Below are positions 10,142 to 55,782 of a stretch of 64,000 bases of DNA, one piece after another (within the stretch, counting starts at the first letter, position 1; each line of letters begins with the position of its first letter). The notes under the pieces are model-generated. The model saw only the letters and a program-made list of their open reading frames with translations. It was not told the DNA's origin and ran no database searches. Origin of the DNA: Isurus oxyrinchus (Eukaryota); assembly GCA_026770705.1 (NCBI GenBank), contig JANJGN010000009.1:163556001-163620000 (forward strand), written 5' to 3'. A program made the translations under genes and the position numbers.

Positions 10142-12730
10142 GGGCTGGATATTCAGCCTCAAAGCGGGTAGGGGGAATTCGGAAAATTCCCCGCTCGGCC
10201 TTGGAAGAAAGTGCCCACAAAGGTGGGATTCCCATTGCTGGGAGCTGTGCCCGGGCTGCAGTCTGGCCAGCCACACCAGGAAGAAATGCAGAGGCAGCCA
10301 CAGGGGCTGCCGGCTGCGGAGACGGGCTGTTTAAAAGGCCCCTCCTTAATGCCCTTGGACTTTGTAACAGCTAAAATCAAAACACAAAGGCCCTTCACCC
10401 CTCACCCCTCACAGCCCACAAAGGGGGTGGATGTGAGGGGAAAATTTGTCATGAGGGGGCTTGGAGGTGGGTGGAAGTGTACAGCTTGAAGTCAGGAGCA
10501 TGAGGGGGTATAAGGCGTGGGTATAGGGATAGAGGGGGAACGAAGGGCCAAGCGGGTTGGATGGGGGTGTGACTTGACATAGCGGGCATGAAATGCACCT
10601 TTTGAACTTAGCTGTTAAAAGATCCCCTCATGCAGACCAGTGTTTACAGCTCCTCTGAGGGGCTTTGGATTACGACTCATTCAAAACCTGGCCCGAGTCC
10701 ATGAAAATTGCAGAGGAGTAGGACGTCACTTTGGTCTGAAGGCTGCACAAAGCACAGGGTAGAGGCCCTGGACTGAGACACCAGCCTTTATCTTGTACAG
10801 AAAGTGTTCACATGTGAGTGACATGAACATTGCTCATCAAAACAAGGAGCGATAGGCAGGGAGACATTCTTTGGAGTTTATTGACAACAATGAACAGTAT
10901 GTACAAGTGATTAACACCCGTGCCCAGGACGTGAAACTACATCTCCTCAGCCACGCGGTGTCTGGCGGCACCGTCGAGACCTTCTGTGCTCAGTGGGTGA
11001 CCACGGGGGTTGGGGTCCTTTATCCAGCCTCTTAATCACATTTTGGTTTGATGTTGTAAGTGTCCTTTAAATCATGTCTTTGGTTTTGCAGTGACCCTAA
11101 CTTAGGGGCTGCGTTTTATATGATCCCTCATTTTGTTAATTTAGTTTATTGGGTTGGCTTTAAAAGAGCTACATCTTCTCAACTTTCCTAATCCTCCCGC
11201 TACATCTTGGTGCTCTGCAGACATCCACAGTGGAGGTAAAGACAGTCTGCTGACTGCTATGCTCTGTCTGTGATAACTTTGGCGGGCGTCCTCTGGAGGC
11301 CTGAGGCCTGGAGGGCCCCGGCTTCCTTTCGAGGTCCTACTGTGTGGCATTAGCACCCTCCTTGGCCTGTGGACTTGGAGCTGTCAAGGTCACAGTAAGA
11401 GGGGAGTTACCAGGATGAATGGCCCCGGAGGGTACACATGTTGATCCTTCTCGCTATGGGTACCCAATGGCCATTGGCTGAATCCTTGAGGAGCAGGTGT
11501 AGCTGGAGTGAGATCGAGCTGCCTGCACCCCTCTCGCATACACACTGTCAGGGGCCAACTATACATCAGCAATGGAGTTCAGCCCCGCAGCAATGTAGGA
11601 ACGATGCCCTGGACCAACGTCTCCATGGCAGCTGCCATCCTACCAGTGTTGACCTCGGTGCAGTGACATGCCGGCGCTATCACCTCAGAGTGCAGGCGGA
11701 CGGACTCCTCCATTGTGCCTTGCAATCTGAGGGGTGCAGCAGATATCCCTTCCTGATGTTCCCGCGTTGGCCTTTCCAGCTCCAGCAACTGTGACATGAC
11801 CAAATCCAGAAACGCGTCACCTGACTCGACCTCAGCAAATTTATGGCCTCCAGCTGCCCACTGAGTGCTGGACACCTGGGAAGCCCCTGCCGCTGCCAGC
11901 TGTGGATCAGGCAGTGCAATTTGCTCACCAGCTGTGACCCTGAGTCTACTCTAAAGCTAGATCTCACCGAGGGGTGTGCCTCTGCGCTGGTGGAGGGTGT
12001 GGGTGAGGGCAGTGACGGTACATCAAGGAGGGTCCCTCCAGGTTCCTCTTCAGAGATTTCTTTGGGGATTACTTGGTGTCCCTGGGTCTCCATCGGCTGT
12101 TTCCCAGATGTGCATGTGGAAGCAAGTGGAAATATTTTGTGCATGGCAGTGGCCTGTGAAACAGGACACATCACTCACAGCATGGTTGTCTGATGGATGT
12201 TGCACTGCTGGACCCTCACTTGGCTGAGCACCGCCGACCTCACCGTCAGCACAGGATTGGTCCAGGCCGTTGCCGGCCAGCTGGATGGCTCTGTTTACAA
12301 AGTACTAGTACTGTTCAGGAACATGATGTTCATATTTTCATACATGTCGCTGAATTTGTCAGTCACATTTACGCCTCTATTATCAACCAAAGAGCGGGAT
12401 TGTCCCCGATTTGCGCTAAGTGCGTTAGTGGGCGGGGAAATCGATGTTTTACCCACCGGCCACAATGGGGGGTTTTCAGGTCGCATCTTCCCAAACCCAA
12501 CGCATTAGTTATGCATTCCTGGGAAACATACCATTTCCATGGTGGGTGGGATCTCATTCACCCCAAACACCATCACTTCACTGCTTCATCAGGCCCAGCA
12601 CCATATGTAAAGTCCAGCCTCGTGCACACATCTCAGTGTTTCCAACCCAGGACCACAGCAGGGAAGATATCCCCAAGAGGCAAAAAGACTGTAGCTCCCA
12701 GGTTTAGTGAGCTGTCACTGTAACACATTG
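10142..12730 (-). mobile_element. Rearranged Harbinger-like element with Myb/SANT gene remnants (intron 2, copy A)
   Basis: GGGCTGGATATT end; - strand coiled-coil exon MSQLLELERPTREHQEG homologous to 25453-25677; inverted 5' piece 12391-12730 with RGKKTVAPRFSELSL. Confidence 0.7.
10952..11168 (+). mobile_element. Tx1-clade LINE 3' fragment with ~15-bp target duplication
   Basis: Homologous to ORF2 end/3' UTR at 47030-47243; ends AAAAGAG; flanked by CTACATCTCCTCAGC (10937) and CTACATCTTCTCAAC (11169). Confidence 0.75.
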
Positions 12731-15163: not shown

Positions 15164-15489
15164 GTAAGTGTTACTTTCTACAAACAATGTGGCGAATGAA
15201 TGTTTTAAATTCATGTCTATCCAAACTGGTCACTGTTTCAGTTCCTTCAGTCAATCTGAGAAATTGCAACTGGCCAAATTCACTCTCTCTGGTTCCTCAA
15301 ACATTCTGAACAAGGTCACTAAGTTGCATTTTTCATGAAAAATGGACAGGATCAGAAAATATCCCCAAAACATGCAAAAATATTGCAGAATCTCCAACAA
15401 ACCCATCGAATCAAAATAGCATTTGATTGACAGAGCTTTCATAAAGCAATTTGTCTATTTCCAGCAGATGGAATTGTGAAATGCAACCT

Positions 15490-17486: not shown

Positions 17487-17604
17487 GACCTGAGTATTGT
17501 TGTGAAGCTTGTACAAGAGTATCACCAACTACATATTTGACAAGTACAGATATAATTTCCACTACCAATCGAGCCACAACTTCAGATCCCGAAAATGCTG
17601 AAAG
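17487..17604 (+). CDS. Gene A exon 4, Ser/Thr-rich stalk (GPEYCCEACTRVSPTTYLTSTDIISTTNRATTSDPENAE)
   Basis: CAACAG acceptor, AG|GTACAA donor, phase 1 in and phase 2 out; same length (118 nt) and frame in copy B. Confidence 0.8.
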
Positions 17605-18415
17605 GTACAATGTTCTCATGGATTGGCATTGCTTCCATATGTGAGAGATACAATTGGCCAAAGGAGTGAAAGTTGTTCATTAATTGTAAAGTAGCTCATC
17701 AGAATGGAAATGGTGGCTGGGTTTATATCATGCTGTTGTGTTAGCTTCTTAATGAGGCTGCATTTTTCTGTTGGAAAATACAAGCAAGGAGTGAGCTTTT
17801 CCATTGTGTTGCCGCTCAGATGGTGTTTTTTGCCTTATTCACCTTGATTACTTCACCGCTAAGGTAACCTCACAGTGTGTGAGGAGTTGTACTTGTCAAA
17901 CTTACCTTGCTGCTGTCTACACTGACAGAGTGGTTGTATTTGGGCTGATGAAAAGGAAGAATTAGCGTGATATATCTGCACATCCCTTGGTTTCACTAAT
18001 GAGAGACATCTTGCAACTCTGGTCCCGTTTCCATATGATTAGCCTGAGCTGTCGACAATAAGTAGCAGAAATTGTAGTCCGATGTAAACACTCAGGAATC
18101 GGGTCTTTGAAGTTACAATGGTGATAAAGACAAAACGCCAACTAAATGTCAAACAGAAAGAGGGACAGTTGGAAATGGGCAGCAGGTATGTCCGCAGCTG
18201 TGGAGAAAATAAACACGTTCATGGTTTGGGTGCAGACACTTCTTCAGAATTCTAGTCCACACACGAAGCGAAGCAGGTCCACTCACCCCACAGATCCCAA
18301 CTGAGCTGCTGAATGTTTCCAGAATCTTCTGTTTTCCATTCATATTTCTAGCACATGCAGTGCACTTACTTTTATGCAGATTATTGTCAATGATTTAAAA
18401 AGTATTGAAAGTCTA

Positions 18416-22859: not shown

Positions 22860-23980
22860 GAGGGAAAATGAAGATTCCGGGGTTACATCTACATTGATGG
22901 AATTTTTCATCCTGACAAAATATTCATTATTCGTCGAGCTTTGAATTTCTTTTAATAATTCTACAGAATAAAAATCGATTTTCTCATCAAATAATTTTGA
23001 CCATTACATTAGTGGAGCAATCAAAAAGCAAAATGATGGCTGCAAACTTCAAATTGTATATCTACATCCTGACAATAATTTCTCTGTTTGCTGCCTTAGT
23101 GTCTACACAACTTTATTTCTTGTTTTAAGACTATCAAATTCTTTAAGAAATAAGCAACTTGAAAGGTTCATTTATTGGAAACCAATCGCTTCATATTATG
23201 ATGCAGCTGAGCTAAATGCTGAGCGGTTCAAATCCAGGAGGGAAACTTGAACCAACTGTCATAAGTAACTGTTGCAATTTGTATGATTGAAGATGCAGGC
23301 TTTGAATTCAATAGTAATAAGACGACTGAGTCTCAACAGGTTTTTATAAAACTAAATTAAACATTTATTAATACAAGAAAGATTGTGAGCACATGCATAT
23401 GTTGACAAAATTACTACTATAATGTCTACAAAAATCCCCTAATTAATCTGGCTCCAAGTTATACCTCCGTTAAGGCATCAGTAAAACACATGGATTTAAA
23501 CAGACCCTGGGCAAAGCTCACTCTGGACAGTCACATTCAAATTGAGTTTCTTTCAGCTCTGGCTCTTTGCAGACAGCGGCTTGAGGCTTACGGACTGGAG
23601 GCTTTAGTTCTTAGAATCGCTCTCCTTTTTACCAACAGCCTTCTAATCCTTTTTACATATTTTTCTCTTTGAATGCAATTTTCATTCTACCACTATTTCT
23701 TTTGAAATTTTAACTCGTCAAATAATAAGACACTTTCATACGACCCACTTTATTAGTAATCCTTGGGAAAAATAAACAAACACACAGTTTCTGAGCTTCA
23801 CCTGGTTAGGTGTAATATTTCACACCATCTCTGAACCCAAGGTAGGGGAGTTAGTTTAAAGAAAAAATGCAAATTGCCCCCATATTTACCTAATTAACAT
23901 TTCAAACCTACTCCTTTTCTATACATCAAAGCCTCTAGACAAGCTGGCTTTAATCCAATTAGGACACACACACACACAGA

Positions 23981-26900
23981 GGGCAGGATTTTCCGAGCCC
24001 GCTGGCAGCATGTGTAATAAGTGGCATGTGTGGATAATATGGTGTGAGCTGCTTCACAATGGCAGCATGAAGGCAGGTTGTGATCGTCCGCTCAGCCCAC
24101 CTACAGCGGGTCGTGCTTCCCGCTATCGGTCAGCGGGGAGCTAATTGTTATACATCAGCATGTAAATAAAAGGCCATCCTGCCAGGCTCTTGGAACCCGG
24201 CCGTATCCTCTGTCCACGTTAGCGGGAAAGCACGCCGACGTGATTCACAACAGCACACAGGCAATTTGTACCTGGTGGCCTTGACTCTGGGGGAAATGGG
24301 GTGAGTGAGCAGCAGCGTTCTCCACAGCTTGCCTGTTGTTTACAGGCTTCAGGGATGCCTGACCCCGGATGTGACTGCTGAGAGGGGGGTCTCCGGGGGG
24401 GGTAAGAGCTGGCCAGCCTTGAAATGCTGAGGGCAAGGTGTCTAGTGGCAAGTGCTGGCTGCCTTGGAGGTGGATACTGAGGGGGAGATGTCCAGGGTCA
24501 TGTGATGACCAACCTCAGAGGCGAATGGTGTCGGTGGCTCCATGCTCAGGACCATCTCAGATGCAGCCATTAAACTTAAGACACATCTGGTGCTGTGTCC
24601 TCCTTCAGCACCTCAGCCCATTCAGGAGCTAGTGCGCAGTATCACTGGTCACAGATGCTGGTGTGATGGGGGTCAGCCCCACCTTAAAGATGCTGAGAGC
24701 TCAAAGTGAGAATGAGAGAACTCTGTGGGGCCTGCCCACTCCATTCTGGCAGCAATGCCCAGCTCCGCCGAGGTGCGGGCATCAGTAATGTGTCCAGGGA
24801 GTGTGAGGCTGGACCATCACTGTTATCTGAAGGTTGCACAGAGCACAGGGAAAAGGCCCTGGACTCATACACCTGCCCTTTATCTTGCACAGGAAGGTTT
24901 CACATCTGAGTGACAAGAACACTGCTCATCAGAACAAGGAGCCACAGGCAGGGTGACGTTCTTAGGAGTTTACTGACAATAGTGAACAATATGTACATGT
25001 GACCAACACCCGTACCCAGGCTGTGCAACTACATTTCCCTAACTTTCCTAACCCTGCCACTACATCTTGCTGCTCCCCGGACATCCACAGCAGAGGTGGA
25101 GCTAACCTGCTGCATGTGACGCCCTGTCTGTGATGACACTGGTGGGCGTCCTCTGGAGGGCTGAGACTTGGTGGGCCCCGGCCTGCTTTCGGGGTCCTGC
25201 TGTGTGGTAGTGGCCCCCTCCTCGGCCTGGGGGGCTGGAGCTGCTGAGATCCTAGGAAGAGGGGAGTCGGGTTGGCCAGTCACTCCCAGAACCTCCTGAG
25301 TCGATGGCCCCGGAGTGTGTACCTGCTGCTCCTCCTCCCTATCGGTGTCTGAGTGCCCCAGGCTGACTCGGAGAGTGGAGGATGTAGCTGGAGTGAGATT
25401 GAGCTAATTGTAACCCCTCTCTCATACACACTGTTGGAGGCCAAATATAGCATCAGCGATGGAGTAAACCATGCACAGGAGTGACGTCCTGGGCCAAGGT
25501 CTCCATGGCAGCTGCCATCCTGCCAGTGTTGACCTCAGTGTATTGCAGCACCGGAGTTATCACATCAGCCTGAAGATAGACAGACCCCTCCATCATGCCT
25601 TGCAATCTGAGGAGTGCAGCGGGCATCCCTTCCTGATGTTCCCGAGCTTGCCTTTGCAATTCCAGTAACTGTGACATGACCGAGCCCAGAGGCTGTCATC
25701 TGACTCGGACTCAGCAACATTGTGGCCTCCAGCAGTCCTCTGAGGGGCAGGGGACCTGGGAAGTCCCTGCCTCCACCTGCTGTAGATCAAACAGTGCGAT
25801 GTGCTCCCAGATTGTGATCCTCAGGCTACTCTAAAGCTAGGGCCCACTGAGGTGTGTGTCTCTGCGCTGGCAGAGGCTGTGGGTGAGCTCTGTGACAGAA
25901 CTTCAGGGAGAGTGCCTTCCGATTCCTCTTCAGAGGTTTCTTCAGGAGACCCTGGGTCATGGACTCTGTCGGCTGCTTCCCAGATGTGTCTGTGAAAGCA
26001 AGGGGAGATAATGAGTGCATGGCAGTGGCCTGTGATAAAGGACACATCACTCACAGCATGGTTATCTGATGGGTGTTGCACTGCTGGACCCTCACTTGAT
26101 AGGGCAGTGCCAACCTTACCATCAGCACAGGACTGGCCCCGATCATTGCCGGTCAGCTGGATGGCTCTGCTTTCGAATTCTGTCAGAACTTTGATCTCCG
26201 GCATCCCTCCACCTGTCTCTGACCTTTCCCCCCTGTTGTGTGCCAGTTTGTCCTGTGTGGATATGGATGGGGACAGTGTGTCAGGATGCCTGCAGGGGAC
26301 AGATGATAAGTATGCCTGGCCTGTGTGGGTGGGGAGTGGTCCCGTGGACAGGGTGAGAACAATGAAGGTGTATGTGAACAGGTGAATGGTGACGTCCCTT
26401 GCACTGGCAGTGAGTGAGGGCCCTGTAGATGTGTGATGGGTTTGTGAGTGTGTGAGTTGGGTTTGTGAAAAGAGTGACTTACCCTGGAGGAACGGAGGAG
26501 ATCATTCATCCTTTTGCGGTACTGGGTGACTGTCCTCCTCTGCAGGACGTTCACACTGACCACCGCTGCCTCCACCTCCCAAGCCGGGTTGGGTACTTTG
26601 CTGCCCACCCTGCGGTCAGAGCGTGGGTTAGAGCACATGCCGGTGCCCCTCCACGGCATCCAGCAGTCGCTTGAGGGACCCATCAATGAAGCAGGGGTCT
26701 GCAGTCTTTTTTCCCTCTGTTGGCCATGTCTCCCAGGCAGGGGTGGTGAGCTGGTGGCGATGAGCGCTTTGATGGTAGCTGCCTTTTAAAGATGGTGGCC
26801 AGCGTGATGTAACAGCGGGGTGATGGTGCGTGGGCGAATGAGAGCCCGCTTGCCATGGAAACGGTGTGTTTCACGGGGGTGAATAAATAATGAGCCGGGT

Positions 26901-27003
26901 TCGGGATGATATGGTGTGAAAACCCGTCATCTTCGTCGGCAGGTAGGACTCCATTTTACCCACCCGCTACCGCACTTAGTGCAATTCTGGGAAAATTCTG
27001 CCC
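23981..27003 (-). mobile_element. Harbinger-like DNA transposon (non-autonomous) carrying a multi-exon Myb/SANT pseudogene (ATG 26727, stop 25029)
   Basis: TIRs GGGCAGGATTTTCC / GGAAAATTCTGCCC; MANRGKK(fs)TADPCFIDGSLKRLLDAV, AWEVEAAVVSVNVLQRRTVTQYRKRMNDLLR, coiled-coil exon; no transposase recognised. Confidence 0.8.
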
Positions 27004-27679
27004 ACAGATACAGACACCACTAAAACTCTCATTTAAAATAATTTCCAATAACATTATAAACATTAATATAATGCTTCACACTTCAATAATATGTGTAACA
27101 TGGGATGGAACCTTTATAACTGTAGAATGGGAGACCCACAGGTATAATAAAGAAGGTGTTTTCCTTTTAGAAACCTGATATGATCTTAATGTTATTATGT
27201 TATGATTTTTATCCATATTTTAGCAAATACAATCTACACTTGTGAGGAATTCCCTGTTTCCTAATGACCACAAGCGCAGTTTCAAGCACGAAGCCTGATT
27301 CCCTGTTTGACCACCTCCTCTCTTGCCCCCTCCATTGTCTCTGTGCTGTCAGACTGCCTGTCCAGCTGCTTGTCCAACAGCCAGTCCCAGATTACAACTG
27401 AACATTGTGAAGACTGAAGCCACTGTCTTTGTCCCCACTACAAACACTTTTCCTTATAGCCACTGATTGTATCCACCTCCCTGTCCAATTGAGTTTTCAT
27501 CCAATGTTGTTCTTACCTACAAATTCGACTGTTCCAATACCATCCGAGTTGACCTTACATCTTCCACCCTGAACCAACTTAAGCTCATCAAAACCTTTGC
27601 TGCCAGTTTAACGATGAGTAAGGCTCTATATCAATGCAAGTTATTGTTCTTGTGCTCCACACTTCCCAGTAGGAAATAA

Positions 27680-28145: not shown

Positions 28146-28566
28146 GGTCTCTACTGGATTCTACTGGACTCATCAGAAATCCAGTAGGGATTCCAGTTGC
28201 TTCAGCTAAATTGAGCTGGAACCACAGCACCTGTTCCCAATTGGACTAGGAGTCAGAGAGGGACAATGCAAGAACTGGGGCATAAACTCTCATTCAGTGG
28301 GTGGTGCAGTCTGAGGAGGACCTGAGAAGGCTTCGAGAGAAAGGTGGGAAAGTGGGAGAAAGGGAGACAGAGACAGAAGCATCCATGACATTGTCCCCAG
28401 AGTTGGTCACTCTGGCAGAATCAGCATCAGCCTCAGGGAAGGAGGCAACTGTGGAGGAGATGGCAGTGGCGGAGGTGGAGGTGGCAGATACGGTACATGG
28501 CAGAGGAGGTGGCGATAGCAGCGGAACTGAAGGTTGCAGTGAAGTCGGCAACAATAGTGGAGAAGG

Positions 28567-29380
28567 ATGAGGTGGAGGCAGTGACTGAGGAGGCTGAGGT
28601 GGAGGCAGTGACTGAGGAGGTTGTTGGAGGCTGAGGTGGAGGCAGTGAGTGAGGAGGCTGAGGTGGAGGTGGTGGCTGAGGAGGCTGAAGTGGAGGCAGT
28701 GACTGAGGAGGCTGAGGTGGAGGCAGTGACTGAGGAGGCTGAGGAAGAGGCAGTGACTGAGGAGGCTGAGGTGGAGGCAGTGACTGAGGAGGCTGAGGTG
28801 GAGGCAGTGACTGAGGAGGCTGAGGTGGAGGCAGTGACTGAGGAGGCTGAGGTGGAGGTGGTGAATGAGGAGGCTGAGGTGGAGGTGGTGGTTGAGGAGG
28901 CTGAGGTGGAGGCAGTGACTGAGAAGGTTGAGGTGGAGGCAGTGACTGAGGAGGCTGTGGTGGAGGTGGTGGTTGAGGAGGCTGAGGTGGAGGCAGTGAC
29001 TGAGGAGGCTGATGTGGAAATGGTGACTGAGGAGGCTGAGGTGGAGCCAGTGACTGAGGAGGCTGAGGTGGAGGCAGTGACTGAGGAGGTTGAGGTAGAG
29101 GTGGTGACTGAGGAGGCTGAGGTGGTGGCAGTGGCTGAGGAGGCTGAGGTGGAGGTGGTGCCTGAGGAGGTTGAGGTGGAGGCAGTGACTGAGGAGGCTG
29201 AGGTGGAGGTGGTGCCTGAGGAGGTTGAGGTGGAGGCAGTGACTGAGGAGGCTGAGGTGGAGGCAGTGACTGAGGAGGCTGAGGTGGTGGCAGTGGCTGA
29301 GGAGGCTGAGGTGGAGGTGGTGCCTGAGGAGGTTGAGGTGGAGGCAGTGACTGAGGAGGCTGAGGTGGAGGTGGTTGCCG
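28567..29380. repeat. 27-bp minisatellite array (copy B, longer)
   Basis: Same unit, roughly 30 copies. Confidence 0.9.
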
Positions 29381-30302
29381 AGGCGATGGAGGTAGTGAAT
29401 GTGGGGGTGGAGGAGGAGACATCAGCAGCGGCAGCAGCAGAGACAGTGACTGAGGCTGAGGAGGGGGAGGCAGCGGCTGTGACAGTGACAGAGGGAGAAG
29501 CAGCGAAGGCGGCAGCAGCAAAGGCTGAGGCCACAGTGAGGGAGGCTGTGGAGAGGGAGCTGGAGGTGGGGCAGAGGCAGCGAGGAGACGGTACGAGACC
29601 AGGAGCAGCAACAAAACCTGCCTTGTGGTTGTGAGGCTCAGGGCAATGGCGACTGTGAGTTGATATCTTCCATGTGCCATGTGTGTGTCTCCGAGTCAGC
29701 GCACCGGACCACACTGCTTCTGCCCGATTAGGGCGCTTCAGTGGAGTCCGACACCAGTCCAGTGCCACCCAGCTCCCATTCCCGAGGACAGGTGATGGAA
29801 CCTGCCCAGTGCCAGGATGAGCTGCTTGGTAAGATCGGGAGGTGGGAAGTAGAGAAGGCAGCCGACCAGGAAAAGCTGGAGGATATCTCCAGGATTACTG
29901 ACTGTCTCCAAGAAGAAACTCTTGTAGCCTTCAGGCAGGGTATATATATGTTTATATAGCTGCAATTTAAAGTTACCTGCCACATCCCTTTTAACACTTT
30001 CTAATGCAGCATCGCTCTGATCAGAATCAGATTTATTGGGGTTGTGCAAATGTCTCCCCAGCCTCTGATATAACAATAAAAAGCTGCTTTTTCCTTTCCA
30101 GTTGCAGTAAGAGGAATGTCCCAGCCTCTCAATGTGACAGGGCAGCCCAGGACTATGTCTCTCAGTGCAACACCCAGGAACACACACAGTGCAGCCCCCA
30201 CATTGATTGTTCCAGTTGTGCGGGGAAAGCGTGCATGTGGAGTAAGTGTACAATTGGGAAGATATTGATTCTCACAACATTTCCACGGCTTTAAATCAAA
30301 TT

Positions 30303-39356: not shown

Positions 39357-40255
39357 GTATATTTCTTACTGATTTTCTTTATTATTCTCAACTGAAATGT
39401 CTGCTCAATGTTTTATCTGGGAGGAAACATGACAGCTCCGATATCCCGAGGCTCCACAGCAATGCAGAGACTTAAAGGTAAAGGGCAGAGGTCGGGAAAT
39501 CCAACTCATGTTACCCAAACCCAATTCATGGCCTGTCAAACATGTCAGAGTTGAACTTTACAAGTGAACTAAACGGAAATTGAGAAGTTGTTTTGATGGT
39601 AAAAGAAGCCTCTTTATTAATTGTTGAGACATTGGGCTGGATATTCAGCCTCAAAGCGGGTAGGGGCAATTCGGAAAATTCCCCGCTCGGCCTTGGAAGA
39701 AAGTGCCCACAAAGGTGGGATTTCCATTGCTGGGAGCTGTGCCCAGGCTGCAGTCTGGCCAGCCACACCAGGAAGAAATGCAGAGGCAGCCACAGGGACT
39801 GCCGGCTGCGGAGACGGGCTGTTTCAAAGGCCCCTCCTTAATGCCCTTGGACTTTGTAACAGCTAAACTCAAAACACAAAGGCCCTTCACCCCTCACCCC
39901 CCACAGCCCACAAAGAGGGTGGGTATAAGGGGAAAATTTGTCATGAGAGTTCTTGGAGGTGGGTGGAAGTGTACAGCTTGAAGTCAGGAGCATGATGGAT
40001 TATAAGGCGTGGGTAAAGGGACATAGGGGGCATTAACGGCCAAACGTGATGGATGAGGATGTGACTTGACATAGGGGGCATGAGATGGACCTTTTGAACT
40101 TAGCTCTTAAAAGGTCCCCTCATGCAAACCAGTGTTTACAGCTCCTCTGAGGGGCTTTGGACTACGACTCATTCAAAACCTGGCCCGAGTCCATGAAAAT
40201 TGCAGAGGAGTAGGACGTGTCCATCTCCACAATGGAGGCAGCCAGGTTGGAGAGT

Positions 40256-43200
40256 AAAAAACAAAAATACAAACAAAAAACTGCGGATGCTGGAAATCCA
40301 AAACAAAAAGTAAGAAATACCTGGAAAAACTCAGCAGGTCTGGCAGCATCGGCGGAGAAGAGCACAGTTGATGTTTCGAGTCCTGATGACCCTTCAACAG
40401 AACTAAGTAAAAAGAAGAGAGGGGTGAAATATAAGCTTGTCTAAGGGGTGGGGGTGGGGGTGCGGGTGGTGAGAGAAGGGGAGAGGTGGTTGTTGGGACA
40501 AGCAAGCAGTGATAGGAGGAGATAACCAAAAGATGTCACAGACAAAAGAACAAAGAGGTGTTGAAGGTGGTGATATTATCTAAAAGAATGTGGTAATTAA
40601 GAACGTATAGCAAGACAAGCAAGGTACAGATAGGTCATGTGGGGGTGGGGTGAAATAAGACTAAAAGGGCATAAAATGTATAGATAAATGATCAGTGGAA
40701 TACATTAAAAATATTGCAAATAGGTGGGAAAAGAAAAATCTATATAAATTATTGGAAAAAAGAAAAAGGATGGGGAAGAAATGGAAAGAGGGTGGGGATG
40801 GAGGAGGGAGTTCAAGATCTAAAATTGTTGATCTCAATATTCAGTCCGGAAGGCTGTAAGGTGCCTAGTCGGAAGATGAGGTGTTGTTCCTCCAGTTTGC
40901 GTTGAGCTTCACTGGAACAATGCAGCAAGCCAAGGACAGACATGTGGGCAAGAGAGCAGGGTGGAGTGTTAAAATGGCAAGCGACAGGGAGGTTTGGGTC
41001 ATTCTTGCAGACAGACCGCAGGTGTTCTGCAAAACAATCACCCAGTCTGCGTTTGGTCTTTCCAATGTAGAGGAAACTGCATTGGGAGCAACGAATGCAG
41101 TAGACTAAGTTGGGGGAAATGCAAGCGAAATGCTGCTTCACTTGAAAGGAGCGTTTGGGCCCTTGGACGGTGAGGAGAGAGGAATTGAAGGGGCAGGTGT
41201 TGCACCTTTTGCGTGGGCATGGGGAGTTGCCATAGGTGGGGGTTGAGGAGTAGAGGGTGATGGAGGAGTGGACCAGAGTGTCCCAGAGGGAACGATCCCT
41301 ATGGAATGCCACCGGGGGGGTGAAAGGAAGATGTGTTTGGTGGTGGCTTCATGCTGGAGTTGGCGGAAATGGTGGAGGATGATCCTTTGAATGTGGAGGC
41401 TGGTGGGGTGATAAGTGAGGACAAGGGGGACCCTATCATGTTTCTGGGAGGGAGGAGAAGGCGTGAGGGTGGATGCGCGGTAGATGGGCCGGACACGGTT
41501 GAGAGCCCTGTCAACGACCGTGGGTGGAAAACCTCAGTTAAGGAAGAAGGAGGACATCTCAGAGGAACTGTTTTTGAAGGTAGCATCATCGGAACAGATG
41601 CGACGGAGGCAAAGGAACTGGGAGAATGGGAAAGTGTCCTTACAGGAAGCGGGGTGTGAGGAGCTGTAGTCGAGGTAGCTGTGGGAGTCGGTAGGCTTGT
41701 AATGGATATTGGTGGACAGTCTATCACCAGAGATTGAGACACAGAGGTCAAGGAAGGGAAGGGAAGTGTCAGAGATGGACCATTTGAAAATGATGGAGGG
41801 GTGGAGATTGGAAGCAAAATTAATAAATTTTTCCAGGTCCAAACGAGAGCATGAAGCGGCACCGAAGTAATCATCAATGTACCGGAGAAAGAGTTGTGGG
41901 AGTGGGCCGGAATAGGACTGGAACAAGGAATGTTCCACATACCCCATAAAGGGACAGGGGCTCATGTGGGTACCCTTAGTCACACCTTTTATTTGGAGGA
42001 AGTGAGAGGAGTTGAAGGAGAAATTGTTCAGCGTGAGAACAAGTTCAGCCAGATGGAGGAGAGTAGTGGTGGATGGGGATTGTTCGGGCATCTGTTCGAG
42101 GAAAAAGCTAAGGGCCCTCAGACCATCCTGGTGGGGGATGGAGGTGTAGAGGGATTGGACGTCCATGGTGAAGAGGAAACAGTTGGGGGCAGGGAACTGG
42201 AAATTGTTGATGTGACGTAAGGTGTCAGAGGAATCACGGATGTAGGTGGGAAGGGACTGGACAAGGGCAGAGAAAAAGGATTCAAGATAACGAGAAATGA
42301 GTTCCGTGGGGCAGGAACAGACTGACACGATCAGTCTGCCGGGACAGTTCTGTTTGTGGATTTTGGGTAGGAGGTAGAAGCGGGCCGTCCGAGGTTGGGC
42401 GACTATCAGGTTGGAAGCTGTGGGAGGAAGATCCCCAGAGGGGATGAGGTCAGTGACAGTCCTGGAAACAATGGCTTGATGTTCAGTGATGGGGTCATGG
42501 TCCATGGAGAGGTCGGAGGAAGTTTCTGCGAATTGACGCTCAGCCTCTGTGAGGTAGAGGCCAGTGCGCCAGACAACAACAGCACCACCCTTGACAGCGG
42601 GTTTGATGACAACGTTGGGGTTGGATCTGAGGGAACGGAGTGCAATAAGTCACAAAACAACTGTTTGCTGAAATGCTAAACAAAGATAAATATTGAGATA
42701 AAAGCAAAGAACTGCGGATGCTGGAAATGCAAACCAAAGACAGAAATAGAAATATCTGGAAAAACTCAGCAGGTCTGGCAGCATCGGTGGAGAAGAGCAC
42801 AGTTGATGTTTCGAGTCCTCATGACCCTTCAACAGAACTAAGTAACAATAGGAAAGGGGTGAAATATAAGCTGGTTTAAGAGGAAGGTGGGTGCGTTGTT
42901 GGGACAAGAAGCCAGTAATAGGTGGAGATAACCAAAAGATGTCACAGACAAAAGAACAAAGAGGTGTTGAAGGTGGTGATATTTTCTAAAGGAATGTGCT
43001 AATTAAGGGTAGAAAGCAGGACAAACAAGGTACAGATAGACCTAGTGGGGGTGGGGTGGGGTGAAGGAATACTAAAAATTCTAAAAATTAGAGATTAACA
43101 GTGGATGGAAATACATTTAAAAATAATGGAAATAGTTGGGAAAAGAAAACTCTATATAAACTATTGGAAAAAACAAAAAGTGGAGGAAGAAACGGAAAGG

Positions 43201-45689
43201 GGATGGAGATGGCGGTTGGGGCCAGGGAACTGGAAATTGTTGATGTGACATAAGGTGTCAGAGGAATCACGGATGTAGGTGGGAAGGGACTGGACAAGGG
43301 GAGAGCGAAGGGAGTCAAGATAATGAGAATTGAGTTCCGTGGGGCAGGAAGAGGCTGACACGATCAGTCTGCCGGGACAGTCCTGTTTGTGGATTTTGGG
43401 TAGGAGGTAGAAGCGGGCTGTCCGAGGTTGGGAGACTATCAGGTTGGAAGCTGTGGGAGGAAGATCTCCAGAGGAGATGAGGTCAGTGACAGATCTGGAA
43501 ACAATGGCTTGATGTTCAGTGGTGGGGTCATGGTCCAGGGAGAGGTAGGAGGAAGTGTCTGCGAGTTGACGCTCAGCCTCCACAAGGTAGAGGTCAGTGC
43601 GCCAGACAACAACTGCACCACCCTTGTCAGCGGGTTTGATGGCAATGTTGGGGTTAGGCCTGAGAGAATGGAGTGCAGTATGTTCAGAGAGAGACAGGTT
43701 AGAATGGGTGAGAGGAGCAGAGAAATTGAGACGACTAATGTCACGCCGACAGTTCTCAATGAAAAGATCAAGAGAAGGTAAGAATCCAGAGGGAGGGGTC
43801 CAGGTGGAGGGAGAATATTGGAGGTGGGTAAAAGGATCCGTTGAATGGGGAGAGGACTCCTGCCCAAAGAAGTGAGCCCGGAGACGAAGACGGTGGAAGA
43901 AGAGTTCAGCATCATGCCGAGCCCGAAATTCATTGAGGTGAGGACGTAAGGATATGAAACTAAGTCCTTTGCTGAGCACTGAACGTTCAGCATCAGAGAG
44001 GGGAAGGTCAGGGTGTATAGTGAATACCCGACCGGGGCTGGGATTGGAAGATGGGGTGGGGACAGAGGGACAGGCAGGGTTGGAGGGTCCTGGATGTGTG
44101 TTGGTATCACTGAGTTGTTGCAGCTTGCGTTCCTTAGCACTTGAGAGAAAGAGAAAAGGTTTCTTGTTGAGGCGACGGATGAGACGAAGAATAGAATGAA
44201 ACTGGGGGCACGGGCAGCTTTGGAAAGGGGTACGGCGATGCTGCTGGAGGGAGAGGTCGAATGTGTTCATATGGCAGCGCATGGCACTGAGTGTGGATCT
44301 CAGAATGCAACGGGAACAGTATTCCGAGGAATGTTGTATGTCCCAGAGATACCTGTAATCCTGGGTTGGTTCGAATCCGATGGAATTTCAGTTGAGATCC
44401 ACATGGGGTAAGTCGGAGACGGAGACAGTCACTGAGAAAGGAAATATGGCTGTGAAAGCGGGTTTTAGTAAACACCTTGTCAAACAGCAGGAGAGAAATG
44501 GAAAGCAATGAAGGTAAATAAGGCAAAAGAGAGATATGAAAATCCTGACGGAGAGTAGTACAAAACTTCTTTAAGGTAGGGATGTCTTGAAGAGAAGTGG
44601 CAGTCAATTAAACACGGATAAAAGCAAAAAACTGCGGATGCTGGAAATTCAAAACAAAAACAGAAACATAAATAGCTGGAAAAACTCAGCAGGTCTGGCA
44701 GCATCAGCGGAAAGAGCACAGTTGATGTTTCGAGTCCTCATGACCCATCAACAGAACTAAGTAAAAATAGGAGAGGGGTGAAATATAAGCTGGTCTAAGG
44801 GGTGGGGGTGGGTGGTGGTGGAGGGAGAAGTTGTTGGGACAAGCAAGCAGTGATAGGAGGAGATAACCAAAAGATGTCACAGACAAATGAACAAAGAGGT
44901 GTTGAAGGTGGCGATATTATCCAAAAGATTGTGCTAATTAAGGATGGGTAGCAGGACAAGCAAGGTACATGGTGGCATCATGCTGCAGTTGGAGGCGGAA
45001 ATGGTGGAGAATGATCCTTTAGTGCGGAGGCTGGTGGAGTGATAAGTGAGGACAAGGGAGACCTCTTCATGTTTCTGGTAGACTTGCTGCCTTCTTCCAG
45101 TGAAGCTCAATGTAAACTGGAGGAACAGCACGTCATCTTCCGACTAGGCACTTTAGAGCCATTGGGACTGAATATTAAGTTCAACAATTTTAGATCATAA
45201 ACTCCCTCCTCCATCCCCACCCCCTTTCTGTTTCTTCCCCCTCCTTTTTCCTTTTTCCAATACTTTATATAGATTTTTCTTTTCCCACCTATTTCCATTA
45301 TTTTTAATGTATTCCACCGATCATTTATCTATACCTTTTAAGCCCTTTAAGTCTTATTTCACCCCACCCTCCACTAGAGCTATCTGTACCTTGATTGTCC
45401 TGCTATCCATTCTTAATTAGCACATTCTTTTAGATGATGTCACCACATTCAACACCTCTTTGTTCTTTTGTCTGTGACATCTTTGGGTTATCGCCTCCTA
45501 TCACTGCTTGCTTGTCCCAACAACTACCGCCGACTTCTCTCTCCACCGCCCCCCCCGCCCCCCGACCCATTAGACCAGCTTATATTTCACCCCTTTCCTA
45601 TTTTTACTTCGTTCTGTTGAAGGGTCATAAGGACTCTAAATGTCAACTGTGCTCTTCTCTGCCGATGCTGCCAGACCTGCTGAGTTTTT
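40256..45689 (-). mobile_element. Penelope-like (Neptune-type) retroelement, rearranged, with RT, Cys-rich linker and GIY-YIG endonuclease
   Basis: IKPADKGGAVVVW, FYLLPKIHK, MDVQSLYTSIPH, LRYIDD, CPRKRCNTC, NLVYCIRCSQC..YIGKT; three pseudo-LTRs on - and an inverted end 45080-45689; TSD CCAGGTTGG(A/G)GAGT at 40242 and 45690. Confidence 0.92.
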
Positions 45690-46071
45690 CCAGGTTGGGG
45701 AGTTCTGGGTGTGGGTTTTGAAGGAGCCAGCCTGGATCCTTTAAAGCTGCTCCCAAAATCACACAACCCTGGAAAGCAGTTGGGAATCCCAGAATTAGGA
45801 CACACCCGCCATTTTTAAAGGGCTCCTGAATCAACCCAAGTTGGTGAAATCCAGGCGGTCACTTTGGTCTGAAGGCTGCACAAAGCACAGGGTAGAGGCC
45901 CTGGACTGAGACACCTGCCTTTATCTTGTACAGAAAGTGTTCACATGTGAGTGACATGAACATTGCTCATCAAAACAAGGAGCGATAGGCAGGGAGACAT
46001 TCTTTGGAGTTTATTGACAATAATGAACAGTATGTACAAGTGATTAACACCCGTGCCCAGGACGTGCAACT

Positions 46072-46209
46072 GGCCTAAATAGCCAAGTGGTTATGGTACT
46101 GGGTTTGTAACCCCAAGATCAGGAATTCAAATCTCACAATGGCAAAATATGAAACAATGTAACTTGATCTGAATAGGAACAGATGGAAATGTGTTTGTAC
46201 TCAAAAGAG
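46072..46209 (+). mobile_element. tRNA-derived SINE-like insertion ending AAAAGAG
   Basis: A-box TAGCCAAGTGG, anticodon-like GGG-TTTGTAA-CCC, B-box-like GAATTCAAATC; absent from copy A. Confidence 0.65.
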
Positions 46210-46224
46210 TTACATTTCCTCAAC

Positions 46225-47455
46225 TCTCGAGGCCTTCCGTGCTCAGTGGGGACTGGGGTGCTTTATTGACCCCTTTTAGCACTTTTTGGTTTAAAGTTGT
46301 AAGTTTCCTTTAAACTTCGTTCTTGGTTTTACAGCTGACCTAAATTAGGGGCTGTCCCTTATTTATCCTAATTTTGTAAATTTAGTTTAATTGTTTTGAC
46401 TCTATAAGAGTTACATCTCCTCAACCCCCGTAATATGAGCCGCCTCGGGGACATGTTCTCTGTGCCATTTGGCACAGCAAAGAGGAGCTTTTTGTACGGA
46501 CTGCTGCTGCACATCTTCCATTTTCTCGCCCTTGTCCGCCGCCTGGATATGCCCTGGCATGCCTTGTTGCCTTCCGGCAGCGGAGGCCCCCGATGGGAGG
46601 CCCTCTGAGGAGGTGTCCTCCCCCTTTCTATCGGGGACCTGGGTTCGAGGGTGTTGCATGCAGCAGTCCCCTATAATAGGAGAATTCATAGGTTCACGGA
46701 CTCCCAAGACACATGCCCTTTTCGTGGTCTTGTGGAGTCCGTGGACCATGCATACATAGGGTGTGGTAGGTTGCACTCCCTTTTCAGTTACTTAATGAAC
46801 CTTTTGTTAATGTTTTGTTTGCACTTCAGCCCCACGCTCCTGATCTATGGACACCCGGTGCGGAAGGGGGTCGGAAAGGAGGAGGACCTCCTCGTGAACC
46901 TGCTCCTGGGCCTGGCCAAGTTGGCCATTAACAGGTCCAGGCAGCAGGCGATCGAAGGGGGAGTCCCGCCCAATTATTTATCCCTCTTCCGCGGCTACGG
47001 TCGCAGCCGGATGTCCCTGGAAAGGGAGCATGCGGTGTCTGCCGGCACTCTCGAACCCTTCCGTGCTCGGTGGGCACCGCGGGGACTGGGGTGTTTTGTT
47101 GACCTCTTTTATCACATTTTGGTTTAAAGTTGTAAGTTTCCTTCAAACTTTGTTCTTGGTTTTACAGCTGACCTGAATTAGGGGCTGTGCCTGATTTATC
47201 CCAATTTTGTTAATTTAGTTTAATTGCTTTGACTCTATAAGAGTTACATCTCCTCAACTCTCGAGACCTTCTGTGCTCGATGGGTGACCACGGGGGTTGG
47301 GGTGCTTTATCCAGCCTCTTAATCACATTTTGGTTTGATGTTGTAAGTTTCCTTTAAATCCTGTCTTTGGTTTTGCAGTGACCCTAACTTAGGGGCTGCG
47401 TTTTATTTTGTTCCTCATTTTGTTAATTTAGTTTATTTGTTTGGCTTTAAAAGAG
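46225..47455 (+). mobile_element. Three stacked Tx1-clade LINE 3' fragments (46225-46410, 46426-47243, 47259-47455)
   Basis: ORF2 C-terminus IGDLG.RVLHAAVP...CPF..LVESVDHAYIGC...LLLGLAKLAI; each fragment ends AAGAG and is followed by a copy of the 15-bp target. Confidence 0.85.
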
Positions 47456-49000
47456 CTACATCTTCTCAACTTTCCTAATCCTCCCGCTACATCTTGGTGC
47501 TCCGCAGACATCCAGAGTGGAAGTAAAGACAGTCTGCTGACTGCTATGCTCTGTCTGTGATAACTTTGGCGGGCGTCCTCTGGAGGCCTGAGGCCTGGAG
47601 GGCCCCGGCTTCCTTTCGAGGTCCTGCTGTGTGGCATTACCACCCTCCTTGGCCTGTGGACCTGGAGCTGTCAAGGTCACAGTAAGAGGGGAGTTACCAG
47701 GATGAATGGCCCCGGAGGGTACACATGTTGATCCTTCTCGCTATTGGCTGAATTAGCGAGCAGCAGGGGTAGCTGAAGTGAGATTGAGCTGCCCGCACCC
47801 CTCTCTCATACACACTGTCAGGGGCCAACTATACATCAGCAATGGAGTTCAGCCCCACAGCAGTGTAGGAACGGTGCCCTGGACCAACATCTCCAAGGCA
47901 CCTACGATCCTACCAGTGTTGACCTTGGTGCATTGACATGCCAGCGCTATCACCTCAGAGTGCAGGTGGATGGATTCCTCCATATTAACTGAAAATTTTA
48001 TTTAAAAAGAGAGAAGGTCACCATCTAATCCTTTATTAACTGTGTTTAATTGTATGCAGTGGTAGCATTAAACAGATGTCTTCAGGTCTGGGCCTTGTAC
48101 ACACTGTCTCCTGGGAGTTCTGACCAGCTACCCTGCTGTCTTCAGGGAGATCTGGCCAACCATCCTGCTGTGTTCTGGGAGATCTAAGCAGCTACCCCCT
48201 CACATAGGCTTCAGTATTCCCTTAAATGTGTTTCTTCTCTTTCATCTCTCTTTGTTGCAACCAGTCTGAAAAGAAATGCTTTTCTTCAAAGGATTGATTA
48301 AATCAATCTTTACCTCTTAGACTTGTAAAAACAAACTTACTCTATGTTTATGTCACGTCCTTACACCTTTTTACAACCTGCATATATCTCCCTTTGAACT
48401 AAAACAACACAATTCAAACTATTTCTGTTATTGCTTCATGTACAAGTCTGTTGTAGTTCTTTTTTGTTTATTAACATATCAAAACCACTTCAAATTGTTG
48501 ACTTTTGACTCTATCCACTGATGAGGCAGTCCATGTCATGGAACCATAACCTTAAATCTGGAGATAGGCTCGTCAGGGATGTCAGGAATCACTTCTTCAC
48601 GCAAAGTATAGCGGAAATCAGGAACACTCTCCTCAAAAAAGCTCTTGAACTTAAATGAAAATTTCAAAACTGATTGACAGATTTTATCTGGTAGCAATAT
48701 TCGGGTTATGGGACCCCGGTAGGTAAATGGACAGAAGATACTGGTCAGTTGGGATTTAATTGAATTGTGGAACAGGCTGAAGGGGCTGCATGTCCGAATC
48801 CCTTTTCCATGTTCTGGAGCCCCAGTTAATTTTTCAGTGGTCTGGGCCTTGTGAGTAACAATGTGCTGTGAAACAAGCTCACAAACAGTTAGCATTTCAA
48901 AGAGACACTTTCCAATCACCAGGCAAACTGTGACCTGTGTTGTTTCAGAGTACAGTTTGTGACAGTGAAAGCAGTGAAGGCCTGCCAAACCTCATTAAAA

Positions 49001-55093: not shown

Positions 55094-55782
55094 GGGCTGA
55101 ATTTTTCTCTATTCGAGCGGGCGCACACCAGATCCAAACGAGAGTAAAATAGTGCGCGATGAGGTCAGACGAGCGTCTGGACATTATCGTACACTCTGGC
55201 GATATTTCTCTCTGCAGGCACGTGCGAGAGGCGGCAGCACGCCCGCTGACAATGAAGCAACCTATTAAGGCCCTTAATCAATTAATAGAATTGAATTTTT
55301 TGCTGCCTGTCCAACTGTTCGGTTGGTTTGTGGTCAAATCGGCCAATCAGCCTTTGCACTTTTGGCGAAACCTCATCAATGGGCGGGATGGGGTTTTGAC
55401 CAGTGATTAAAGCCAAAACTTTGAGAACTCGTATTTAAATGGCCATGGTCATGTGACAGAGTCACATGAGGGAACATGTTTTCATTAGTTTTCAATTCTT
55501 TATTTTGATTGTTCAAAATCTTCAGCTCCCTGAGGCAGCTCTGAGACTCAGGGAGCTTTCACTGTGAGCACGCGCACACATGCACAAACTTGCACGCTTG
55601 CCCTCCTCCCACCCTCACGCCAGCAGTGCTGAGCGTTGCAGCGCGTATTATGTACTGACTGGCCATTAATTGTCCAGCCCGTGTGAAATCGATGTTGGGG
55701 CCTGATTCGGGGCAGTGGTCGGCTTCACAACCACTCCTGAGCCCACCTGCCATGCCCATCCGACAAGGGCAAAATTCTGCCC
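55094..55782. mobile_element. Harbinger-type non-autonomous element with 3-bp TSD ATG
   Basis: ATG|GGGCTGAATTTT ... AAAATTCTGCCC|ATG. Confidence 0.75.

What the first reader, a model, noticed from the sequence alone, without database searches (positions are those of the whole stretch)
46060..47470. Tx1-clade LINE that repeatedly targets the stop codon of a Harbinger Myb/SANT gene
Seen: the 15-mer (C/T)TACAT(C/T)T(C/T)CTCAAC occurs at 46210, 46411, 47244 and 47456, separating three 5'-truncated Tx1 ends that all finish in AAGAG. Copy A has one insertion flanked by the same duplicated 15-mer (10937, 11169). The related element at 23981-27003 has the empty site (25029-25043). On the - strand the 15-mer encodes the last codons and stop of the transposon gene (KVEKM*, KVREM*), so insertions land antisense immediately after the stop and leave the ORF intact. 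Established: Tx1-clade elements are often sequence-specific, and Xenopus Tx1L inserts into a DNA transposon. Inference: a possibly undescribed target specificity in which a retrotransposon parasitises a Harbinger family.
Basis: partly seen in the sequence, partly recalled or inferred. Interest (0 to 1): 0.8.

Follow-up and report, generated by a model that had tools for sequence, protein, structure and literature searches.

The report
Retroelement stack at one transposon site
Three truncated copies of an L1/Tx1-type jumping gene and one small tRNA-headed partner element have landed one after another at the same 15-base spot in an old DNA transposon of a shark, which is a good example of a habit already described for Tx1 elements in frogs and crocodilians, not a new kind of system.

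Summary
The 15-mer occurs six times (0.06 expected). It separates a tRNA-headed SINE and three 5'-truncated LINE tails that all end in AAGAG. A related element carries the same site once, with no insertion.

- **Not independent copies.** Copies A and B are the two arms of a ~95% identical segmental duplication. A's insert and B's third fragment are most likely one event.
- **Sequential insertion.** Fragment lengths, subfamilies, private substitutions and inherited 15-mer variants point to at least four insertions, not a tandem duplication.
- **LINE type.** The ORF tail matches the C-termini of endonuclease–RT proteins, some named "Transposon TX1". The RT is not in the window, so Tx1 membership is likely but untested.
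- **Host element.** It has 14-nt inverted ends and probably a 3-bp duplication, which fits Harbinger. No search confirmed a Myb/SANT gene or a transposase.
- **Family-wide specificity.** This could not be shown. Reads show thousands of host copies, mostly empty, and a SINE scattered in AT-rich DNA.

Tx1 families that target DNA transposons, Harbinger included, are published (Kojima 2015). The scan had already noted this stack in paralogous copies nearby, and a similar stack on another piece.

The parts
45858..46069 (.). Host-element sequence downstream of the - strand ORF's stop. This is the native left flank of the target and ends ..GTGCAA.
   Evidence: 98.6% identical to A 10726-10936 and 85% to C 24817-25028. 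Read depth is about 4,100, against about 6 in the bin at 45700-45773.
46070..46209 (+). tRNA-headed SINE, about 140 nt, ending AAAAGAG. There is no 15-mer on its left side, and it lacks the first 2 nt of the family's 5' end.
   Evidence: Rfam tRNA model covers 1-71 at 46073-46144 (19.4 bits, E 0.81, below gathering). Read depth is 7,000-11,000. The loose-end consensus shows the family 5' end ..GGCT before 46071.
46210..46224 (+). 15-mer copy 1 (TTACATTTCCTCAAC)
46225..46410 (+). LINE 3' end, fragment 1 (186 bp, 3' UTR only), subfamily Y
   Evidence: 91% identical to the 3' end of fragment 2. It carries the family-majority letters at the positions matching 47055, 47056, 47105 and 47144, where fragment 2 has private letters.
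46411..46425 (+). 15-mer copy 2 (TTACATCTCCTCAAC)
46426..47243 (+). LINE fragment 2 (818 bp). It holds the last ~233 codons of ORF2 (46426-47124, with one internal stop at 46606-08 and the natural stop at 47125-27) and a 116-nt 3' UTR ending TATAAGAG.
   Evidence: Translation. Protein matches. 949 reads continue with LINE sequence to the left of 46426 (agreement 0.98), so this copy is 5'-truncated.
47244..47258 (+). 15-mer copy 3 (TTACATCTCCTCAAC)
47259..47455 (+). LINE 3' end, fragment 3 (197 bp), subfamily X. It is the paralogue of the insert in copy A.
   Evidence: 94.4% identical to 10974-11168, but only 82-85% to fragments 1 and 2.
47456..47470 (+). 15-mer copy 4 (CTACATCTTCTCAAC), with its native right flank TTTCC... 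Its first three bases are the stop codon of the - strand ORF.
47456..47680 (-). C-terminal part of the decayed host ORF (..RCSGRIRKVEKM*)
   Evidence: It aligns in frame with C 25029-25283.
10937..11183 (+). Copy A: 15-mer (CTACATCTCCTCAGC), a 217-bp LINE 3' end (10952-11168), then 15-mer (CTACATCTTCTCAAC)
23981..27003 (-). Related 3.0-kb host element C. It has 14-nt inverted ends (23981-94 and 26990-27003, 13 of 14 matching) and an unoccupied target at 25029-25043.
   Evidence: The end motif occurs 8 times in the window against 1.15 expected.

Best explanation
An L1/Tx1-group LINE with an apurinic-type endonuclease, and a tRNA-headed SINE that shares its ~16-nt tail, inserted repeatedly by target-primed reverse transcription at one position of an old, high-copy, TIR-bounded DNA transposon (Harbinger-like). 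The position is the junction ..GTGCAA|CTACAT.., which is the stop codon of the element's decayed ORF read on the other strand. The bottom strand is nicked at that junction and the top strand about 15 nt downstream. Each event therefore re-creates the 15-mer on both sides and regenerates a usable target, which is how a stack grows.

Shown: the target duplication, the empty site, at least four separate events, and their antisense orientation.

Inferred:
- The first event (fragment 3 = the A insert) came before the A/B segmental duplication.
- The later B-only events (fragment 2, fragment 1, SINE) went into a left-hand 15-mer copy. If each went into the copy beside the native upstream flank, their order is fragment 2, then fragment 1, then the SINE.
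- The enzyme has a strong preference for this sequence, possibly helped by pairing between the RNA's 3' end (..AAGAG-TTACA) and the target's CTACA.
- This is a preference and not exclusive homing.
For: - The 15-mer occurs 6 times against 0.06 expected. It occurs once at the empty site in element C and once in the empty-site consensus from reads and contigs: 1,024 reads, and 211, 115 and 188 contigs.
- The units differ in length (140, 186, 818 and 197 bp) and in subfamily (82-91% identity).
- Fragment 1 has family-majority letters where fragment 2 has private ones, so it was not copied from fragment 2.
- The 15-mer copies to the left of an insert (A-left and B copies 1-3) read CTCC or TTCC at positions 7-10. 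The rightmost copies (A-right and B copy 4) keep CTTC, as does the family consensus. This fits one old insertion shared by A and B, followed by new insertions into the left copy.
- Fragments 1 and 3 both start right after ..CAAC at LINE position ..CAC|TCTCGAG. That is 2-3 nt of microhomology, as expected for 5' end-joining.
- The ORF tail matches the extreme C-termini of Exo_endo_phos + RVT_1 + zf-RVT proteins, two of them named Transposon TX1.
- Tx1 elements are documented to do exactly this (PMC4494074).
Against: - All the evidence comes from one locus and its paralogue.
- No other genomic LINE copy could be read.
- In the read data most host-element copies are empty. The partner SINE has AT-rich 5' and 3' flanks with no consensus (agreement 0.3-0.4). 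No abundant LINE-end-to-host-flank joint appeared among the listed joints (the lists are truncated, so this is weak).
- Twenty-two nt of the A insert (10952-10973) are missing from B's fragment 3, and the model does not explain this.
- The SINE has no 15-mer on its left.
Confidence: 0.55

Rival explanations
1. Strict homing. The whole LINE family is specific for this 15-mer and lives only in this transposon family, as R2 lives in 28S rDNA.
For: Four hits at one nucleotide. Tx1 precedent: 90% of SINEU-3 copies lie in Mariner-N4_AMi. Unchecked scan notes report a similar stack on another piece of the genome.
Against:: host flanks have a depth of ~4,100 (left) and ~1,000-2,300 (right), and the main loose-end cluster at the site is the empty form. 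The LINE 3' part has a depth of ~2,400, so far fewer occupied sites appear available than there are LINE ends. The SINE with the same tail is dispersed in AT-rich DNA. No LINE-to-host joint was listed, although joints with a handful of reads were.
Confidence: 0.2
2. Self-targeted array growth. The machinery is not specific for the transposon sequence. It tends to insert next to the 3' junction of an existing copy, because the RNA 3' end (..AAGAG-TTACA) pairs there. One chance insertion then seeded the stack.
For:: about 970 reads join a SINE end (46213-46217) directly to a SINE start (46071), so head-to-tail multimers are common. The largest SINE 3' loose-end cluster lies after TTACA (46214), not after AAGAG. 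This suggests TTACA belongs to the element's end and resembles the target's CTACA. The internal 15-mers start with T and the native ones with C.
Against: The B-only insertions lie to the left of the oldest fragment and carry the left-copy variant. None of them went in directly behind the oldest fragment's 3' end, at the rightmost 15-mer copy. This is weak evidence: about 1 chance in 4 if the 15-mer copy is chosen at random. The first insertion also hit this exact position.
Confidence: 0.2
3. Local rearrangement. The stack arose by tandem duplication or unequal crossing-over of one insertion, and the 15-mer is part of the repeated unit.
For: Fragments 1 and 3 begin at the same LINE nucleotide. 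The region lies in a duplication-prone array.
Against: Unit lengths and content differ: one is a SINE and one carries 700 nt of ORF. There are two LINE subfamilies at 82% identity. Fragment 1 lacks fragment 2's private substitutions. A 15-nt repeat is too short for efficient homologous exchange. The 15-mer is present in empty elements.
Confidence: 0.05

Closest known systems
Tx1-9_AMi (Alligator mississippiensis), Kojima 2015, PMC4494074
   Same: A Tx1-type LINE that inserts preferentially at a fixed position inside Harbinger DNA transposons.
   Different: Its target lies ~300 bp from the 5' end of three alligator Harbinger families. Here the target is the 3' end of the element's ORF in a shark repeat whose Harbinger identity is only partly supported. 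The preference has not been measured here.
Tx1-Mar LINEs and SINEU-3 in crocodilians, targeting Mariner-N4_AMi
   Same: A LINE and its partner SINE share one transposon target. The target duplication is 16 bp. Tandem insertions 'sandwiching a TSD' are explained there by sequential insertion. Partner SINEs range from strong (90%) to weak (13-23%) target preference.
   Different: The host superfamily differs. SINEU has snRNA-derived heads and poly(A) tails. Here the SINE head is tRNA-like and the elements end in AAGAG with no poly(A).
Tx1L in Tx1D (Xenopus laevis)
   Same: The founding case of a LINE that lives inside a DNA transposon, at one site (as cited).
   Different: According to Kojima 2015, Tx1D is a non-autonomous piggyBac element. 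The target sequence is unrelated.

Membership tests
Tx1 clade of non-LTR retrotransposons | The RT domain groups with Tx1 and not with L1 in a phylogeny (RTclass-type test) | not testable with these tools
   The window holds only the last ~233 codons of ORF2, with no RT.
Tx1 clade of non-LTR retrotransposons | ORF2 with an N-terminal apurinic-type endonuclease, an RT and a C-terminal zinc knuckle (the L1/Tx1 architecture) | tested here: inconclusive
   Met in relatives only. P0094 and P0104 have Exo_endo_phos + RVT_1 + zf-RVT, and the window tail aligns to their last 160 residues at 33% identity. The best solved relative of P0094 is L1 ORF2p, at 5.6e-66. In the window copy the CxxC of the knuckle is degraded.
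Tx1 clade of non-LTR retrotransposons | Closest named relatives are Tx1, not L1 | tested here: met
   The cluster of P0051 and the protein P0085 carry the name 'Transposon TX1 uncharacterized 149 kDa protein'. No looked-up hit is named LINE-1. The tail profile finds no L1 ORF2p chain in the PDB at E<=10. The names are automatic, so this is weak evidence.
Target-specific non-LTR retrotransposon | Most genomic copies are flanked by the same target sequence | tested here: inconclusive
   There is one locus and its paralogue in the window. The read lay shows mostly empty host copies and lists no abundant LINE-to-host joint, but its lists are truncated.
Target-specific non-LTR retrotransposon | Recurrent independent insertions at the identical nucleotide with a regenerated target duplication | tested here: met
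   Four units are separated by 15-mers in B, and an empty site is present in C and in reads.
PIF/Harbinger DNA transposon (host element) | Terminal inverted repeats with a 3-bp target duplication | tested here: inconclusive
   Element C has 14-nt ends matching at 13 of 14, with flanks AGA/ACA (or CAG/CAG if the ends are taken 1 nt longer). A 689-bp element with the same ends at 55094-55782 has a perfect ATG/ATG duplication. This fits Harbinger, but a 3-bp duplication is not unique to it.
PIF/Harbinger DNA transposon (host element) | DDE transposase of the Harbinger type | tested here: not met
   No such ORF was found in 23000-27600. Pfam at E<=10 on all long open frames found nothing. The copies here would have to be non-autonomous derivatives.
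PIF/Harbinger DNA transposon (host element) | A second gene encoding a Myb/SANT-like DNA-binding protein | tested here: inconclusive
   Pfam found nothing and two word searches found nothing. The frames are broken by frameshifts and a likely intron. Only a motif-level resemblance from my own memory remains (..W..RT..Q.RKRMNDL..), and that is a lead, not a test.
tRNA-derived SINE | tRNA-like head with a Pol III promoter region, and a tail shared with a partner LINE | tested here: inconclusive
   The Rfam tRNA model spans its full length at 19.4 bits, below the gathering score of 29. ARAGORN finds no tRNA. The last ~16 nt resemble the LINE tail at 13 of 16 positions. Very high copy number.

The most novel reading that the evidence does not exclude
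A chondrichthyan Tx1 lineage whose endonuclease recognises the 3' end of the ORF of a Harbinger-like transposon family. This would be a target not reported before for Tx1, found in the oldest jawed-vertebrate branch. Its tRNA-Thr-like SINE partner would have largely escaped that specificity and spread genome-wide. That would offer a natural pair for studying how target choice is split between the endonuclease and RNA 3'-end pairing.
Probability: 0.3. Interest if true: 0.45.

Novelty: new member of a known kind. Interest (0 to 1): 0.3.

Why it matters
If the preference proves to be family-wide, it adds a shark example to the short list of LINEs that live inside DNA transposons. That would suggest this Tx1 habit is old and recurrent in vertebrates. 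The locus also gives a dated series of events (insertion, segmental duplication, three more insertions). This series could be used to order the expansion of the surrounding receptor-gene array. It does not open a new class of mechanism.

Tried and rejected
- **Fetching other genomic copies.** Protein-pattern scans of metagenome, genome and viral contigs found no relative. A DNA pattern of the LINE tail in metagenome contigs gave 0 hits.
- **Protein atlas.** It was closed for new sequences.
- **Host gene identity.** Pfam on 15 open frames at E<=1 or E<=10 found nothing relevant. Word searches with the 200-aa and 226-aa frames of element C found nothing. The generic inverted-repeat search missed the short ends; they were found by eye and then tested with a pattern.
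- **tRNA.** ARAGORN found no tRNA in the SINE.
- **'The 15-mer is part of the LINE': rejected.** Empty sites carry it. Its first five bases (TTACA) may however coincide with the element's own 3' end.
- **'A and B are independent hits': rejected.** A and B are arms of one duplication. The shared left/right 15-mer variants also favour one ancestral insertion.
- **Scan's findings index.** A search by sequence was blank.
Full report
**What is there.** The pattern YTACATYTYCTCAAC, with up to one mismatch, matches six times, all on the + strand. The positions are 10937, 11169, 46210, 46411, 47244 and 47456. A shuffled window gives 0.06 matches.

In the right-hand locus (B) the layout is:
- native flank ending ..GTGCAA (to 46069)
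- a ~140-nt unit (46070-46209)
- 15-mer
- 186-bp unit (46225-46410)
- 15-mer
- 818-bp unit (46426-47243)
- 15-mer
- 197-bp unit (47259-47455)
- 15-mer (47456-47470)
- native flank TTTCC..

Every unit ends in AAGAG. In the left-hand locus (A) a single 217-bp unit (10952-11168) lies between two 15-mers. A more distant relative of the host element (C, 23981-27003) has the homologous site once, at 25029-25043, with nothing in it.

**The units.** BLASTN and a MAFFT alignment show that the three B units and the A unit are 3' ends of one LINE family in two subfamilies.
- Fragments 1 and 2 are 91% identical.
- Fragment 3 and the A insert are 94.4% identical.
- Between the two groups, identity is 80-85%.

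Only fragment 2 reaches into coding sequence. It holds the last ~233 codons of an ORF, with one internal stop, followed by a 116-nt 3' UTR.

The leftmost unit is not a LINE. The Rfam tRNA model aligns end to end at 46073-46144 (19.4 bits, below threshold). Its last ~16 nt resemble the LINE tail. It is a tRNA-headed SINE, which another first-stage note on this window had also suggested.

**A and B are not independent.** A self-comparison of the window shows that 1-18412 and 28560-54176 are two arms of a segmental duplication, 95-96% identical over 8.5 kb and collinear through both loci. The host-element flanks are 98.6% (left) and 94.2% (right) identical between A and B. The A insert and fragment 3 are 94.4% identical.

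In both arms the 15-mer to the left of this insert reads ..CTCC.. and the one to its right reads ..CTTC... The second form is also the family consensus seen in reads. A shared left/right difference is most simply one mutation that occurred before the duplication. The A insert and fragment 3 are therefore one event inherited by both arms.

The scan's other notes of near-identical 1,400-letter stacks lie tens to hundreds of kilobases away on the same piece. They are probably further paralogues of this array, but I could not check them.

**Sequential insertion, not tandem duplication.**
- The 15-mer is target sequence. It is present once in element C.
- It is also present once in the consensus of reads and contigs that run from the left flank straight into ..ACATCTTCTTAAC TTTCCTAACCC.. 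This consensus rests on 1,024 reads in X21 and on 211, 115 and 188 contigs in X1, X2 and X5.
- The units differ in kind, length and subfamily.
- At four positions the read majority differs from fragment 2 (47055, 47056, 47105, 47144). At each one fragment 1 carries the majority letter. Fragment 1 was therefore not copied from fragment 2 after fragment 2 had diverged.
- The three internal 15-mers carry the left-copy variant. This is expected if each B-only insertion went into a left-hand copy and duplicated it again.
- Fragment 3 is the oldest unit. If each later insertion used the 15-mer copy beside the native flank, the order is fragment 2, then fragment 1, then the SINE.
- Fragments 1 and 3 both begin at ..CAAC|TCTCGAG, where the LINE reads ..GCAC TCTCGAG. 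The 2-3 nt of shared sequence fits microhomology-assisted 5' joining and can explain the coincidence.

**Unexplained details.**
- Twenty-two nucleotides of LINE sequence at the 5' end of the A insert (10952-10973) are absent from B's fragment 3. A later small deletion or a conversion from the fragment-1 junction would account for this, but neither is shown.
- The SINE has no 15-mer on its left. Its 5' end, missing the family's first two bases, abuts GTGCAA directly. Kojima 2015 reports insertions without target duplication alongside duplications for crocodilian Tx1-mobilised SINEs.

**What kind of LINE.** Pfam finds nothing in the 172-residue stop-free tail. The word search finds only short fragments at 57-72% identity. 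A profile of the tail and three of those fragments was searched against 1.84 billion representatives and gave 294 hits. The long hits match at their extreme C-termini.
- P0094 and P0104 (about 1,290 aa) have Exo_endo_phos, RVT_1 and zf-RVT domains.
- The medaka cluster of P0051 and the Takifugu protein P0085 are named 'Transposon TX1 uncharacterized 149 kDa protein' by their sources.
- One hit lies in a horn-shark gene model.
- BLASTP gives 33% identity over the last 160 residues.
- The best solved relative of P0094 is L1 ORF2p.
- The tail profile itself finds no L1 chain.

The element therefore belongs to the L1/Tx1 group and is probably Tx1. The defining test, an RT phylogeny, cannot be done on this window.

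**What the host is.** On the - strand an open frame ends at the 15-mer in A, B and C. The last ~75 residues align in frame between copies whose DNA is ~79% identical here, so a native stop codon at this position is credible.

The 'Myb/SANT gene of a Harbinger' label, however, found no support. Pfam at E<=10 on every long frame returned nothing relevant. Two word searches returned nothing. No transposase frame is present.

What does fit Harbinger:
- Element C ends in 14-nt inverted repeats (GGGCAGGATTTTCC and its near-complement, 13 of 14).
- The end motif is enriched in the window, 8 matches against 1.15 expected.
- A 689-bp element with the same ends at 55094-55782 has a perfect 3-bp duplication, ATG/ATG.

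A 3-bp duplication is the hallmark of PIF/Harbinger (my own knowledge) but is not exclusive to it. I therefore call the host 'Harbinger-like'.

**Genome-wide behaviour.** No other copies could be fetched. One read lay was possible. It used about 1.9 Gb of raw reads from a species labelled differently from the best holders, plus Logan contigs of three runs.

| Segment | Read depth (X21) |
|---|---|
| Adjoining bin 45700-45773 | ~6 |
| Left host flank | ~4,100 |
| Right host flank | ~1,000-2,300 |
| LINE (fragment 2) | ~1,750-3,000 |
| SINE | ~7,000-11,000 |

All three are families of thousands of copies. Four further points follow.
- The dominant form at the site is the empty one.
- The SINE's 5' and 3' flanks are AT-rich with no consensus (agreement 0.3-0.4), so the SINE is dispersed and not confined to this target.
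- About 970 reads join a SINE end directly to a SINE start, so head-to-tail multimers are common.
- The largest SINE 3' loose-end cluster lies after TTACA, not after AAGAG. The element's true end may therefore be ..AAGAG-TTACA, which resembles the target's CTACA and would allow pairing during priming.

No abundant joint from the LINE end to the host flank was among the listed joints. Those lists are truncated, so the absence is only a hint.

Taken together, four hits at one nucleotide cannot be chance, so there is real targeting or self-targeting. The data favour a preference over exclusive homing.

**Comparison with what is known.** Kojima 2015 (PMC4494074) reviews Tx1 elements with sequence preference and describes the following:
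- Xenopus Tx1 inserted in Tx1D, a non-autonomous piggyBac element
- crocodilian Tx1-Mar LINEs and SINEU SINEs inserted in Mariner-N4_AMi, with a 16-bp duplication and tandem copies 'sandwiching a TSD'
- Tx1-9_AMi, inserted preferentially ~300 bp from the 5' end of three Harbinger families
- partner SINEs whose preference ranges from 90% down to 13%

The shark locus matches this pattern point by point. It differs in host lineage, in the position within the transposon, in the tRNA-like SINE head and in the AAGAG end without poly(A). A search for Tx1 and shark found no paper that describes it.

**Verdict.** This is a new member of a known kind and of modest interest. Earlier follow-ups in this scan reached the same reading on paralogous copies, and one note reports a similar stack on another piece. 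I used those notes as leads only.

Noticed in passing
window 40219-45857: A 5.6-kb segment is present in arm B but absent from arm A. It sits exactly at the boundary between upstream sequence and the truncated host element. Its ~610-bp terminal regions are inverted copies (40319-40929 and 45083-45695, 90% identical), and it has internal direct repeats. Its - strand ORFs look like a reverse transcriptase followed by a GIY-YIG-like region, so it is probably a Penelope-like element that inserted after the duplication.
   Followed up: partly
window 55094-55782: A 689-bp element with the same GGGCWGAATTTT inverted ends as host element C and a perfect 3-bp flanking duplication (ATG/ATG). It is probably a miniature derivative of the same transposon superfamily. 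More solitary ends lie at 18417 and 63596.
   Followed up: partly
window 46070-46217 (read evidence): The SINE is extremely abundant. Roughly one in five of its 3' ends in reads abuts another SINE start, with only TTACA(T) between them. Many contigs show 3'-truncated SINE pieces joined to a new SINE start. So multimers are a regular form of this family.
   Followed up: partly
window 47221 joined to 46118: About 490 raw reads from X21 join LINE 3' UTR sequence at 47221 to the second half of the SINE at 46118. No contig in the other three runs shows this joint. It may be a chimeric repeat family in that species or an alignment artefact at 80% likeness.
   Followed up: no
window 47373-47433: The LINE 3' UTR gives a weak match to Rfam DLEU2_4, a conserved region of a mammalian lncRNA (22.8 bits, E 0.089, gathering score 40). 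It is most likely chance or a shared ancient repeat tail.
   Followed up: no
window 1-1285 and 28560-29480: Long arrays of a ~27-bp minisatellite lie at the left edge of both arms of the segmental duplication.
   Followed up: no
window 11713-13450 versus 47983-48078: Arm A has ~1.7 kb where arm B has ~95 bp. Part of the extra sequence (to 12296) still aligns with element C, so arm B has lost host-element sequence there.
   Followed up: no
window 10952-10973: Twenty-two nt of LINE sequence at the 5' end of the A insert are absent from the paralogous fragment 3 in B, which instead begins at the same nucleotide as fragment 1. The cause (deletion or conversion) is unresolved.
   Followed up: partly
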